Shown piece after piece: positions 5,087 to 6,314 of a stretch of DNA of 64,000 nucleotides. This DNA is from Schmidtea nova. Its lineage: Eukaryota. The notes beneath the pieces are model-generated. The model was given only the letters and a program-made list of their open reading frames with translations. It was not told the DNA's origin and ran no database searches. Position 1 is the first letter of the stretch. Each line of letters opens with the position of its first letter. Made by a program: the position numbers and the translations under genes. The stretch is taken from positions 45,260,001 through 45,324,000 of the forward strand of contig CM097883.1 of the NCBI GenBank assembly GCA_044892505.1, given 5' to 3'.

Positions 5087-5119
5087 ACACAATATTTCGG
5101 CACAGCCTTTATCAAGTGT
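5087..5119 (-). ncRNA. Minimal type-I hammerhead ribozyme, U3-A8 variant (family A), intact
   Basis: Reverse complement reads ACAC-TTGATAA-A-GGC(TGT)GCC-GAAA-TA-TT-GTGT. Confidence 0.8.
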
Positions 5120-5127
5120 GTATATAT

Positions 5128-5891
5128 TGTTGGGGTTATTATAAAAATCACAAAAGTAACAAGAAATATCAAAATAAATAAAAATGCAAAAATTAATTAA
5201 AATTTATCAAAAATTTAAAATTAATATTCGCTAGGAGAAATGGGTATGGTTGAATGCCAAATCAAAAGACGAACCCAAAAATAATAATAGAAATTTAGTA
5301 AGGGTCCCCAGAGAAAGTTATTTAATAAAAACAAACTAATTAAAATTAATTAATCGCTCAATTGGAAGTCCGAGACAATGGGAAGTCCGAGGCAATGTGA
5401 AACCCGAGCGATGAGGAAAGCCCGAGCGCAAAGAGACCCGAGAGATCAAAGTCGGGGCAATTAGGAAAAATCCATCCGAGGATAATTAAAATAATTTGTT
5501 AGCAAAACAATTAAACCCGAGATTGGTTAACTTTTAGGTATCGATAAAACCTAATTGCTATTTTCGAGAACTATAAAAGGCAGCGCAAAACGGTGGACGG
5601 AGCCGACGAGTTGATAGCTAAAAAAAGGAGAATATTAAAAAGTTTCGAAAACAAATAAAAAAGATCCTGAAGAAATCAAACCGAAAAAGTGATAAAGTAT
5701 CCTTTTAACTAAAGAGTCAAATCCGAATCCAACAGAAAGCGTAAATTGACCAAAAGCGTGAATAAAAATTTGTAATTTGTGTTGATCGTGAATAAAAAGA
5801 TTGTTCTGTGTTGGGTTCATTGATTTCGATAATTAAAGAGCACGAGGAATCAGGTCAGTAAACCGATCTTAACCAGAATAATAACCCAACA
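5128..5891 (+). mobile_element. Solo LTR (Ty3/Gypsy-like), 764 bp
   Basis: TGTTGGGGTT...AACCCAACA termini; 4-bp TSD ATAT at 5124-5127 and 5892-5895; internal TATAAAAGG. Confidence 0.85.
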
Positions 5892-5900
5892 ATATATTAC

Positions 5901-5933
5901 ACACTTGATAAAGGCTGTGCCGAAATATTGTGT
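5901..5933 (+). ncRNA. Minimal type-I hammerhead ribozyme, U3-A8 variant (family A), intact
   Basis: ACAC-TTGATAA-A-GGC(TGT)GCC-GAAA-TA-TT-GTGT; predicted cleavage after 5929. Confidence 0.8.
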
Positions 5934-6233
5934 TATTGTTTATAAAAAAAAATTTTGATCTATAGTCAGCATTATGAGAATTATTGATAATAATAATAAA
6001 AAAAGATCAAANNNNNNNNNNNNNNNNNNNNNNNNNNNNNNNNNNNNNNNNNNNNNNNNNNNNNNNNNNNNNNNNNNNNNNNNNNNNNNNNNNNNNNNNN
6101 NNNNNNNNNNNNNNNNNNNNNNNNNNNNNNNNNNNNNNNNNNNNNNNNNNNNNNNNNNNNNNNNNNNNNNNNNNNNNNNNNNNNNNNNNNNNAATGCTGA
6201 CTATAGATCAAAAATATTTTTTTATAAACAATA

Positions 6234-6266
6234 ACACAATATTTTGGCACAGCCTTTATCAAGTGT
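6234..6266 (-). ncRNA. Family A hammerhead copy with G12A change
   Basis: Same motif on the minus strand, with GAAA read as AAAA. Confidence 0.65.
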
Positions 6267-6281
6267 GTATATATATATTAC

Positions 6282-6314
6282 ACACTTGATAAAGGCTGTG
6301 CTGAAATATTGTGT
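6282..6314 (+). ncRNA. Family A hammerhead copy (G-U closing pair in stem II)
   Basis: ACAC-TTGATAA-A-GGC(TGT)GCT-GAAA-TA-TT-GTGT, back-to-back with 6234-6266. Confidence 0.7.

What the first reader, a model, noticed from the sequence alone, without database searches (positions are those of the whole stretch)
5087..6314. Ambisense hammerhead ribozyme family (U3-A8 core) arranged in back-to-back pairs
An apparently anonymous repeat is a minimal type-I hammerhead: ACAC-UUGAUAA-A-GGC(UGU)GCC-GAAA-UA-UU-GUGU. The canonical C3-G8 tertiary pair is replaced by the compensatory U3-A8 pair. Stem III is only the palindrome AUAU, so cleavage should need a dimer, as is established for PLE-associated minimal HHRs and the avocado sunblotch viroid. 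Four copies alternate in strand here (5119-, 5901+, 6266-, 6282+), and at least 10 occur in the window. The unit 5896-6270 (about 375 bp including an N-gap) has inverted arms with an HHR at each end, so it encodes a ribozyme in both polarities. Described metazoan retrozymes and PLE pseudo-LTRs usually carry HHRs in one polarity, whereas dual-polarity HHRs facing each other in a hairpin are a viroid-like trait. Inference: a non-autonomous, PLE-mobilised, foldback retrozyme that may produce circular or rod-like RNA of both strands.
Basis: partly seen in the sequence, partly recalled or inferred. Interest (0 to 1): 0.85.

Follow-up and report, generated by a model that had tools for sequence, protein, structure and literature searches.

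The report
Hammerhead-like end of inverted repeat family
A short repeated DNA unit, usually found in mirror-image pairs, ends in a 33-base motif that fits the rules for a minimal hammerhead ribozyme of a kind already published for Penelope-like retroelements; nothing here shows that it cuts RNA, and its "both-strand" look comes only from the mirror-image DNA copies.

Summary
The 33-mer is exact at 5087-5119(-) and 5901-5933(+), and has one change at 6234-6266(-) and 6282-6314(+). Ten copies of the repeat end occur in the window, but only three still satisfy hammerhead rules. The motif sits 3 nt inside a sharp, TA-flanked end of a 127-215 bp unit. Units lie head-to-head or tail-to-tail, and the N gaps fall inside units.

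The features called new are published for Penelope-like element (PLE) minimal hammerheads (PMC4209133): the U3-A8 core, the extra base before helix II, the palindromic helix III, and paired motifs on opposite strands. Inverted PLE insertions at (TA)n that break assemblies are also published (PMC8557442). The window also holds a PLE RT/GIY-YIG gene remnant and one canonical minimal hammerhead (52847-52887).

Against function:
- Nine predicted pairs show no compensatory change.
- Helix II has 3 bp, against 6-8 bp in published examples.
- The fold is no more stable than shuffled sequence.
- A perfect competing hairpin (-69 kcal/mol) sits next to the motif.
- No unit lies next to the PLE gene.

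My best reading (0.5) is a PLE-type hammerhead-like motif on a short non-autonomous repeat. The main rival (0.35) is a DNA-transposon or foldback end that resembles a hammerhead by chance. The viroid-like ambisense reading is unsupported.

The parts
5047..5122 (-). Family unit, partial (runs into gap 4816-5046). Carries the hammerhead-like motif at 5087-5119 and the sharp end at 5122.
5123..5897 (.). Foreign 775-bp segment between two head-to-head units. It has its own roughly 20-nt inverted ends and partial copies at 39.1 and 40.6-40.9 kb. Probably a later insertion into the TA spacer.
   Evidence: (I5)
5898..6011 (+). Family unit with the motif at 5901-5933. The predicted cleavage site lies between 5929 and 5930. 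The unit runs into gap 6012-6192.
6193..6269 (-). Family unit, partial (starts at the gap edge). Motif at 6234-6266 with G12 changed to A.
6270..6278 (.). 9-nt TA-repeat spacer between head-to-head units.
6279..6396 (+). Family unit with the motif at 6282-6314 (helix II G-C changed to G-U). Runs into gap 6397-6568.
6569..6685 (+). Distal part of a long-type unit. It starts at a gap edge and is homologous to 17726-17821.
17726..17821 (+). Long-type unit that lacks the first 62 nt or so, so it has no motif. Lies tail-to-tail with the next unit.
   Evidence: (I14)
17832..18035 (-). Full long-type unit (about 205 nt). The motif has decayed: C3 opposite A8, GAAA changed, helix I broken.
18042..18071 (+). 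First 30 nt of a unit, head-to-head with 18035. It is cut short by the nested pogo-like element.
18072..19369 (+). Nested pogo/Tigger-like DNA transposon remnant with its own end sequence. It carries CENP-B_N/HTH_Tnp_Tc5 and the start of DDE_1. The gene is broken (at least 2 frame interruptions, most of DDE_1 lost). Not part of the family.
33512..33638 (-). Short-type unit (about 127 nt) with a decayed motif.
33644..33703 (+). First 60 nt or so of a unit, head-to-head with 33638. It is followed by an unrelated DDE_1 fragment at 33733-33855(-).
36255..36375 (+). Solo unit with a decayed motif (helix II and GAAA broken).
37891..37977 (-). Unit that lacks the terminal 35 nt or so, so it has no motif.
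56597..56722 (-). Short-type unit with the motif at 56687-56719. The core is intact but A15.1 faces C.
57178..57303 (+). Short-type unit whose first 20 nt or so are not homologous. It is the partner of 56722, with 455 bp of foreign sequence between them.
   Evidence: (I4)
52011..52899 (.). Comparison element: an inverted repeat (arms 52011-52288 and 52622-52899, 95.4% identical) carrying a canonical PLE-type minimal hammerhead at 52847-52887(+). The left-arm copy at 52023-52063(-) has G8 changed to U.
10649..12460 (-). Penelope-like element gene remnant (RVT_1 and GIY-YIG). It is broken (one in-frame stop seen, N-terminal part not found). No family unit or hammerhead lies in its flanks.

Best explanation
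The finding is one end of a short interspersed repeat. Units are about 127 bp, with a longer type of about 205-215 bp. Each unit has two different, defined ends. One end is sharp, lies beside TA or (TA)n, and carries the 33-nt motif starting 3 nt in. The other end is A-rich.

Units are laid down as inverted neighbours: head-to-head with 5-9 nt AT spacers, and tail-to-tail. This is the 'complex tandem/inverted' layout at (TA)n sites that is published for Penelope-like elements and that breaks short-read assemblies.

I take the motif to be a degenerate member of the published PLE minimal type-I hammerhead class, in its U3-A8 core variant, carried by a non-autonomous unit that depends on a PLE-type enzyme. 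If it works at all, it would work as PLE minimal hammerheads are thought to. Two same-strand copies in one transcript would pair through the AUAU palindrome to build helix III, and each would cut after U17 (between 5929 and 5930 in this copy), probably with protein help.

The 'both polarities' appearance is a by-product of inverted DNA copies and does not point to an ambisense RNA replicon.

Shown: the sequence, the fit to the descriptor, the unit ends and junctions, the decay of most copies, and the presence of a PLE gene remnant and a canonical hammerhead in the window. Inferred: descent from PLE hammerheads, dependence on a PLE enzyme, and any cleavage.
For: - Descriptor fit. The motif has the traits that PMC4209133 lists as emerging beyond its search descriptor: an unpaired base between 9 and 10.1, G10.1-C11.1 and a palindromic 15.2-16.2. 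It also has the short 4-5 bp helix I and the U3-A8 core variant described there.
- Chance. The expectation is about 0.01 per window.
- Internal control. The same descriptor finds one canonical C3-G8 minimal hammerhead at 52847-52887. It shares the CAC/GUG helix I, U7, the bulged A, U17 and a UA-type helix III with the family motif.
- A PLE RT/GIY-YIG gene remnant lies in the window.
- Block boundaries. The conserved block shared by the subfamilies ends exactly at the 3' strand of helix I (column 36). The sequences diverge after that.
- Asymmetric units. Several units (33512-33638, 56597-56722, 57178-57303, 36255-36375) have no second inverted end within kilobases. This does not fit a two-TIR DNA element.
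- Pairs born together. The arms of a pair share private variants (33638/33644 and 56722/57178).
- Truncated copies. Three units lack the motif-bearing end: 17726-17821 and 37891-37977 end at different points, and in 57178-57303 the first 20 nt or so are not homologous.
- Published PLE behaviour that matches: an inverted copy adjacent at the 5' end, (TA)n targets and assembly breaks (PMC8557442); cutting and extension of both target strands at AT-rich DNA (PMC11167929); insertion next to earlier copies (PMC6765202).
Against: - No compensatory change in any of 9 predicted pairs across 9 distinct copies. Pairing is 82.5% against 83.4% in shuffles.
- Helix II has only 3 bp with a 3-nt loop, whereas PLE minimal hammerheads have 6-8 bp. 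With helix II of 4 bp or more, only the canonical 52847 motif passes.
- The fold energy is -5.9 kcal/mol, no better than shuffles.
- Every copy faces a perfect complement nearby. The 6225-6325 hairpin is -68.9 kcal/mol.
- Position and direction do not match the one PLE mapped in detail, where the hammerhead lies at the pLTR-ORF junction and the insertion's 3' end is about 90 nt downstream of the cut. Here the motif starts 3 nt from a fixed end. Cleavage would remove the first 32 nt of the unit instead of releasing it.
- No unit lies in or beside the PLE gene remnant.
- The U3-A8 core is AT-rich and unspecific in 28%-GC DNA. It accounts for 8 of 9 chance hits, and a low-complexity repeat matches a relaxed descriptor 7 times.
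- No further copies could be obtained from any collection.
Confidence: 0.5

Rival explanations
1. The 33-mer is simply the terminal inverted repeat of a TA-targeting DNA transposon, MITE or foldback family. It is conserved because a transposase binds it, and its fit to a relaxed U3-A8 hammerhead descriptor is a coincidence in AT-rich DNA. Strand alternation follows automatically, because both ends of every TIR element look alike, so two neighbouring elements always present back-to-back ends.
For: - The end is sharp and identical in 10 copies, with TA outside it in 9 of 10.
- Conservation is highest in the outermost 17 nt and falls inward.
- 5898-6269 has the form of a MITE, with arms at least 59 nt long and 97% complementary.
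- 17726-18035 is a palindrome with a shared centre.
- There is no covariation, and diverged copies break the core without compensation.
- The descriptor was fitted after the fact, and chance hits are nearly all of the U3-A8 type.
- TA-targeting pogo/Tigger elements are active in this genome: 47939-50087 has TA-flanked TIRs, and one is nested at a TA inside the unit at 18070-18072.
Against: - No transposase with these ends was found. The pogo at 47939-50087 has different TIRs. The pogo-like remnant beside 18042 begins with its own end sequence, shared with a relative from another organism.
- Short-type units have one sharp end and one different distal end, and no partner end within kilobases.
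- Five of about seven loci are head-to-head pairs within 5-9 nt, or with a foreign piece in the spacer. That is far more than independent insertion predicts. The pair arms also share private variants.
- The chance of the descriptor fit is only about 0.01 per window, and a real PLE hammerhead with the same helix I lies in the same window.
Confidence: 0.35
2. One reading: a foldback retrozyme whose RNA carries active hammerheads in both polarities and produces circular or rod-like RNAs of both strands, in the manner of a viroid.
For: - Motifs face each other in a hairpin, as the hammerhead sequences do in rod-like avsunviroid RNAs.
- Two same-strand intact motifs lie 381 nt apart (5901 and 6282), so in principle a unit-length RNA could be released.
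Against: - The (-) motif that would bound the unit 5896-6270 has lost G12.
- Because the DNA is a palindrome, both transcripts are nearly the same sequence. 'Dual polarity' therefore carries no extra information.
- Known animal retrozymes are direct tandem repeats with canonical loop-loop hammerheads (PMC7229834), and neither feature is present.
- The competing hairpin is more than 60 kcal/mol more stable than the ribozyme fold.
- The unit length rests on an estimated N gap.
- There is no expression evidence of any kind.
Confidence: 0.05

Closest known systems
Minimal type-I hammerheads of Penelope-like elements, including the U3-A8 core variant of Schistosoma mansoni Cercyon elements (Cervera and de la Pena 2014, PMC4209133)
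   Same: The core layout. The U3-A8 core in place of C3-G8. An unpaired base between A9 and 10.1. G10.1-C11.1. A palindromic sequence in place of helix III, implying dimers. A 4-bp helix I. Many dispersed single motifs, and pairs on opposite strands 100-700 bp apart.
   Different: Helix II has 3 bp instead of 6-8 bp. The motif starts 3 nt from a fixed unit end instead of lying inside a pLTR. No unit adjoins an RT/GIY-YIG gene in this window. No covariation was seen.
PLE insertion architecture: partial tandems plus an inverted 5'-truncated copy, (TA)n targets, assembly breaks (Craig et al. 2021, PMC8557442; PAc study, PMC11167929)
   Same: Inverted neighbouring copies, TA-rich junctions and N gaps at the repeat. 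PLE enzymes are reported to extend both target strands and to insert next to older copies.
   Different: In PLEs the inner junctions are variable truncation points, and the hammerhead reads outward near the 3' end. Here the head-to-head junction is at the same base in every copy, and the motif sits at that junction.
Animal non-LTR retrozymes (Cervera and de la Pena 2020, PMC7229834; Li et al. 2026 preprint, 10.64898/2026.07.22.740005)
   Same: Short non-coding units with a type-I hammerhead, thought to be PLE-dependent.
   Different: Retrozymes are direct tandem repeats of 170-400 bp with canonical hammerheads that keep loop-loop contacts, and they yield abundant circRNAs. Here the copies are inverted, the motif is minimal, and no RNA evidence exists.
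Schistosome Sm-alpha/Sj-alpha SINE-like elements with a hammerhead (as summarised in PMC6765202)
   Same: A short dispersed unit with a defined 5' end, a hammerhead near that end and an A-rich far end.
   Different: Those have a pol III promoter ahead of a canonical, active hammerhead. No promoter boxes were recognised here, and inverted pairing is not a feature of those elements.
TA-flanked MITEs and foldback elements of the Tc1/mariner/pogo superfamily (general knowledge)
   Same: Sharp inverted ends beside TA, palindromic short elements, and hairpin-forming transcripts that match miRNA models.
   Different: No cognate transposase was found. Many units have only one such end. The paired arrangement is too regular.
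Avsunviroidae double-hammerhead RNAs (general knowledge; dimer idea from Forster et al. 1988, as cited in PMC4209133)
   Same: A short helix III that would need a dimer, and motifs of the two polarities lying opposite each other in a rod.
   Different: Those are autonomous circular RNAs with canonical cores and proven cleavage. Here the motif sits in genomic DNA palindromes with mostly decayed copies.

Membership tests
PLE-type minimal type-I hammerhead | Catalytic core: CUGANGA ... GAAA, with a 3-8 pair (C-G or the published U-A variant) | tested here: met
   The UUGAUAA ... GAAA core is intact in 6 of 10 copies. 3 of 10 pass the whole descriptor.
PLE-type minimal type-I hammerhead | Unpaired base between A9 and 10.1, and a G10.1-C11.1 pair | tested here: met
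   The A at alignment column 15 is invariant. The G-C (or G-U) closing pair is present in 8 of 9 distinct copies.
PLE-type minimal type-I hammerhead | Long helix II (6-8 bp) that compensates for the missing helix III | tested here: not met
   Helix II has 3 bp with a 3-nt loop. With a requirement of 4 bp or more, only 52847-52887 passes.
PLE-type minimal type-I hammerhead | Palindromic 15.2-16.2 or loop 3, allowing a dimer helix III | tested here: met
   AUAU is present in the young copies and in 33638/33644. It is broken in 56722, 18035 and 36255.
PLE-type minimal type-I hammerhead | [quoted passage not shown] | tested here: inconclusive
   0 of 9 pairs show a two-sided change, and pairing equals the shuffled level. 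Only 9 distinct copies were available, and the inferred subfamily founders are identical across the motif.
PLE-type minimal type-I hammerhead | Lies in the pLTR flanking an RT/GIY-YIG ORF (at least for some copies) | tested here: not met
   The PLE gene remnant at 10649-12460 has no unit, direct repeat or hammerhead in its flanks. This is one window only.
PLE-type minimal type-I hammerhead | Self-cleavage, as a dimer or with protein help | not testable with these tools
   Only thermodynamic predictions are available: -5.9 kcal/mol, z = -1.2.
Rfam hammerhead families | Score at or above the gathering threshold | tested here: not met
   No hammerhead hit at gathering or at E<=10. The canonical motif at 52847 is also missed, so this test has no power for minimal hammerheads.
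Animal non-LTR retrozyme | Direct tandem repeats, each with a same-strand canonical type-I hammerhead | tested here: not met
   Neighbouring copies are inverted, and no direct tandem array was found.
Animal non-LTR retrozyme | Abundant circular RNA of unit length | not testable with these tools
   No expression data are available.
TIR DNA transposon / MITE (Tc1-mariner-pogo type) | Two inverted termini per element | tested here: inconclusive
   Met for 5898-6269, though across an N gap. Not met for the short-type units 33512-33638, 56597-56722, 57178-57303 and 36255-36375.
TIR DNA transposon / MITE (Tc1-mariner-pogo type) | TA target-site duplication | tested here: inconclusive
   TA lies outside CACAC in 9 of 10 ends. 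The sites are TA-rich and no empty site is available, so duplication cannot be told apart from element sequence.
TIR DNA transposon / MITE (Tc1-mariner-pogo type) | Autonomous partner encoding a transposase between the same ends | tested here: not met
   The pogo at 47939-50087 has other TIRs. The pogo-like remnant at 18072 is nested and has its own end. Relatives at 52-66% identity carry no such ends.
Viroid-like ambisense ribozyme RNA | Intact hammerheads of both polarities within one replicating RNA | tested here: not met
   In 5896-6270 the minus-strand motif has lost G12. The dual polarity follows from the DNA palindrome.

The most novel reading that the evidence does not exclude
The units are a so far undescribed kind of PLE-dependent, SINE-like element. 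In this reading the hammerhead sits at the very 5' end. Each insertion event lays down a mirror-image pair, and transcripts of the resulting palindromic arrays are cut by dimerising U3-A8 hammerheads into unit-length hairpin RNAs, possibly circles, that look the same from either strand.
Probability: 0.06. Interest if true: 0.75.

Novelty: new member of a known kind. Interest (0 to 1): 0.27.

Why it matters
If the motif is a real PLE-type hammerhead, this adds one more family to a class already known to run to thousands of copies in invertebrate genomes. Its only unusual points would be a very short helix II and a fixed position at the end of a short, mirror-paired unit, which might say something about how PLE enzymes copy short templates on both target strands. 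If it is a transposon end that resembles a hammerhead by chance, the case is a useful warning. In AT-rich DNA the U3-A8 'core' is cheap, and any motif in an inverted repeat will look 'ambisense'. On either reading, the array at 4.8-6.6 kb is an assembly-breaking palindromic repeat, and its stated sizes should not be trusted.

Tried and rejected
- Rfam at gathering score and at E<=10, on the whole window and on 81 nt around the motif. There was no hammerhead hit. I rejected this as evidence because the canonical motif at 52847 is missed too. The miRNA hits at 6232-6316 only reflect the perfect hairpin.
- Pattern scans of the viral and metagenome collections with helix II left free. The 52 loci found are all chance matches in unrelated DNA. 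The eukaryote's genome is not in any collection I could reach.
- Exact-protein look-ups for the pogo transposase and the TNFAIP8-like gene. Neither is on record.
- The species was not identified. The best TNFAIP8 hit is 31% identical, to a barnacle protein.
- I first took the pogo-like gene at 18486-19369 as proof that the motif is a pogo TIR. I withdrew this when a 66%-identical relative (L056) showed that the shared 5' region starts at the TA inside the unit, which makes it a nested insertion. Its right end is not in the window.
- A peptide search with an ORF spanning a unit pair, meant to harvest more copies. One query was too short and the other found nothing.
- Looking for a hammerhead or direct repeats around the PLE gene remnant. 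None was found.
- Helitron-type, DIRS-type and pol III SINE-type readings, considered from general knowledge. I dropped them because no diagnostic ends, recombinase gene or promoter boxes are present.
- The Lunse et al. paper on dimeric PLE hammerheads is not held, and the supplement of PMC4209133 is not held either. The exact published descriptor limits are therefore unknown to me.
None was entered into a tool, note or this report, and none serves as evidence.
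Full report
**1. What is in the sequence**

The 33-nt motif is exact at 5087-5119(-) and 5901-5933(+). It has one change at 6234-6266(-) and 6282-6314(+), and two changes at 56687-56719(-). 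Shuffles give none. The outer 17 nt of the repeat end occur ten times with 0-1 mismatch, against 0.25 expected: at 5122-, 5898+, 6269-, 6279+, 18035-, 18042+, 33638-, 33644+, 36255+ and 56722-.

Read as RNA, the intact copies give these parts:
- helix I: ACAC/GUGU;
- core: UUGAUAA;
- one unpaired A;
- helix II: GGC-UGU-GCC;
- GAAA;
- the palindrome AUAU;
- U17.

In the 5901-5933 copy the predicted cut lies between 5929 and 5930. ViennaRNA returns this fold as the minimum free energy structure at -5.9 kcal/mol, but with z-scores of only -1.2 to +0.5 against shuffles.

**2. The gaps (tested first, as asked)**

The left edge of gap 6012-6192 lies about 114 nt into a (+) unit. The right edge lies about 77 nt from the end of a (-) unit. 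The gap therefore separates two inverted copies of the same repeat.

The edges 5047 and 6193 fall at the same unit position. The edges 6011 and 6396 fall within 4 nt of each other. The assembler evidently stops inside this repeat. Continuity, spacing and unit number across 4816-6568 are therefore unknown, and '375 bp' is only an estimate. No frame is at stake. I did not look up or fill the gaps.

**3. How many copies are hammerhead-competent**

I wrote a descriptor with these terms:
- a C3-G8 or U3-A8 core;
- an optional bulge;
- helix II of 3 bp or more;
- GAAA;
- a palindromic helix III;
- U16.1;
- H17;
- helix I of 4 bp or more.

Three family copies pass it: 5087-5119(-), 5901-5933(+) and 6282-6314(+). 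The other copies fail as follows:
- 6234-6266 has lost G12.
- 56687-56719 has C opposite A15.1.
- 18035, 33638, 33644 and 36255 break the core or the helices in several places.
- 18042 is cut after nt 30.

Counting the nine predicted pairs over nine distinct copies gives no two-sided change. Pairing is 82.5%, against 83.4% in shuffles. The three competent copies all belong to one young, nearly identical subfamily, so their integrity needs no selection to explain it.

**4. Chance**

Random Markov-1 windows of the same composition gave 9 descriptor hits in 933 windows, about 0.01 per window. Eight of the nine were of the U3-A8 type. A looser scan of the real window picks up a low-complexity repeat at 58.8-59.4 kb seven times, all with the U3-A8 core. 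The fit is thus unlikely for one window but not remote. The descriptor was fitted after seeing the motif, and the U3-A8 core is cheap in 28%-GC DNA.

**5. An internal control**

The same descriptor finds one canonical minimal hammerhead at 52847-52887(+). It has a C3-G8 core, a bulged A, a 6-bp helix II, a palindromic helix III and a 4-bp helix I. It lies in the right arm of a 280-nt inverted repeat (52011-52288 and 52622-52899, 95.4% identical). The left-arm copy at 52023-52063(-) has G8 changed to U.

Rfam misses this motif too, even at E<=10. The absence of Rfam hammerhead hits for the finding therefore says nothing.

The canonical motif shares several things with the family motif: the CAC/GUG part of helix I, U7, the bulged A, U17 and the UA-type helix III. 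This is suggestive of common descent, but I only noticed it after the fact.

**6. Anatomy of the repeat**

Alignment of the copies shows a unit with two different ends. One is the sharp motif-bearing end, with TA outside it in 9 of 10 copies. The other is a distal end after an A-rich tract, about 127 nt in:
- 33512-33638;
- 56597-56722;
- 57178-57303;
- the two young (+) copies, which reach this region before the gaps.

In a longer type the distal end lies about 205-215 nt in (17832-18035, and the distal part 6569-6685). The subfamilies are nearly identical over the first 36 nt, that is, to the end of helix I, and differ after that.

Units lie head-to-head with 5-9 nt AT spacers at 6269/6279, 18035/18042 and 33638/33644. 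In two cases a foreign piece sits in the spacer:
- 5122/5898, with 775 bp that has its own inverted ends (I5);
- 56722/57178, with 455 bp.

Units also lie tail-to-tail at 17821/17832, and probably in the gaps. Pair arms share private variants, so pairs seem to be born together. Three units lack the motif end: 17726-17821 lacks the first 62 nt or so, 37891-37977 lacks the terminal 35 nt or so, and in 57178-57303 the first 20 nt or so are not homologous.

**7. The transposase lead that failed**

A pogo/Tigger-like gene remnant follows the copy at 18042. It has CENP-B_N/HTH_Tnp_Tc5 at 18486-18905 and the start of DDE_1 up to 19369. A DDE_1 fragment also follows the copy at 33644.

I first read this as proof that the motif is a pogo TIR. 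A relative whose N-terminal domain is 66% identical (L056, from a Logan contig) shares the region upstream of the gene, but only from the TA at 18070-18071 onward. The pogo-like element therefore has its own end starting at 18072 and is nested in the unit. Its right end is absent from the window.

The window's other pogo (47939-50087) has unrelated TIRs beside TA. More distant relatives carry no such ends either. No cognate transposase for the family is therefore known.

**8. What the literature already holds**

Cervera and de la Pena (PMC4209133) describe:
- PLE minimal hammerheads with a short helix I, a long helix II, an unpaired base before helix II, G10.1-C11.1 and palindromic 15.2-16.2;
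- a U3-A8 variant with about 1,300 hits in Schistosoma mansoni;
- 'dual' motifs 100-700 bp apart on opposite strands;
- very low activity, even as dimers.

Craig et al. (PMC8557442) describe an inverted 5'-truncated copy adjacent to PLE insertions, (TA)n targets and the resulting assembly failures.

The PAc study (PMC11167929) shows four things. The enzyme cuts and extends both target strands at AT-rich DNA. The hammerhead lies at the pLTR-ORF junction. Reverse transcription starts about 90 nt downstream of the cut. The ribozyme needs protein help.

Animal retrozymes are direct tandem repeats with canonical hammerheads (PMC7229834).

**9. Weighing the readings**

For a PLE-type hammerhead on a short non-autonomous unit:
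- the descriptor fit, including traits not forced by the search;
- the PLE gene remnant (10649-12460, RVT_1 and GIY-YIG, broken) and the canonical hammerhead in the same window;
- the conserved block ending at helix I;
- single-ended units;
- pairs born together at TA-rich sites;
- assembly breaks.

Against it:
- the 3-bp helix II;
- no covariation;
- no link to the PLE gene remnant's flanks;
- a motif position, 3 nt from a fixed end, that fits no mapped PLE and would make cleavage remove the unit's own first 32 nt;
- a neighbouring perfect complement that folds at -68.9 kcal/mol.

For a plain transposon or foldback end with a chance resemblance:
- the sharp TA-flanked inverted ends;
- conservation that is strongest at the outermost bases;
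- the MITE-like form of 5898-6269.

Against it:
- no transposase;
- single-ended units;
- the regular pairing.

The viroid-like ambisense reading gets 0.05. Its key unit has a dead minus-strand motif, its length rests on a gap, and dual polarity is automatic in a palindrome.

**10. Limits**

All inference rests on about a dozen copies in one window. No collection I could search holds this genome or close relatives. I declare one slip.

Noticed in passing
window 52011-52899 (motif 52847-52887 +; 52023-52063 -): A canonical PLE-type minimal hammerhead (C3-G8, bulged A, 6-bp helix II, palindromic helix III) lies in the arms of a 280-nt inverted repeat (95.4% identical) with N gaps on both sides. 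The left-arm copy has G8 changed to U. Rfam misses it.
   Followed up: partly
window 10649-12460 (-): A Penelope-like element gene remnant with RVT_1 and GIY-YIG domains. It is broken (one in-frame stop seen, N-terminal part not found). No pLTR-like repeat, hammerhead or family unit lies in its flanks.
   Followed up: partly
window 47939-50087: An apparently complete pogo/Tigger DNA transposon. It has 30-nt TIRs (97% complementary) next to TA, and ORFs with CENP-B_N/HTH_Tnp_Tc5 and a 406-aa DDE_1 part. The exact protein is not on record in the public collection.
   Followed up: partly
window 18072-19369 (+) and 33733-33855 (-): Two further pogo-like remnants, both lying inside or right after family units. 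The first is inserted at a TA 30 nt into the unit, so the units seem to attract TA-targeting insertions.
   Followed up: yes
window 27160-29523 (-): hAT-type transposase ORFs (DUF4371, zinc finger, hAT dimerisation domain).
   Followed up: no
window 14660-14705, repeated at about 14836-14923: A histone 3' stem-loop-like element scoring 32.3 bits, just under Rfam's threshold of 34. It lies within an 88-nt direct repeat, and the adjacent ORF 14228-14614 has no Pfam hit.
   Followed up: no
window 36255-37977: An eIF2-alpha gene on the minus strand (S1 and EIF_2_alpha domains; matches residues 159-278 of solved eIF2-alpha chains). It is bracketed by two family units whose distal ends face the gene. 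A zf-BED ORF (36074-36259) abuts the unit end at 36255.
   Followed up: partly
window 58774-59442 (-): A low-complexity tandem repeat matches a relaxed U3-A8 hammerhead descriptor seven times. This illustrates the false-positive risk of that core in AT-rich DNA.
   Followed up: yes
window 6232-6316: Several miRNA covariance models (mir-3688, mir-5879, mir-31 and others) match both strands below their thresholds. They match only because the head-to-head unit pair is a near-perfect 45-bp hairpin.
   Followed up: yes
window gap edges 5047, 6011, 6193, 6396: Contig pieces between the gaps start and end at the same positions of the repeat unit. This shows that the scaffold in 4816-6568 is built from repeat-limited contigs.
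   Followed up: yes
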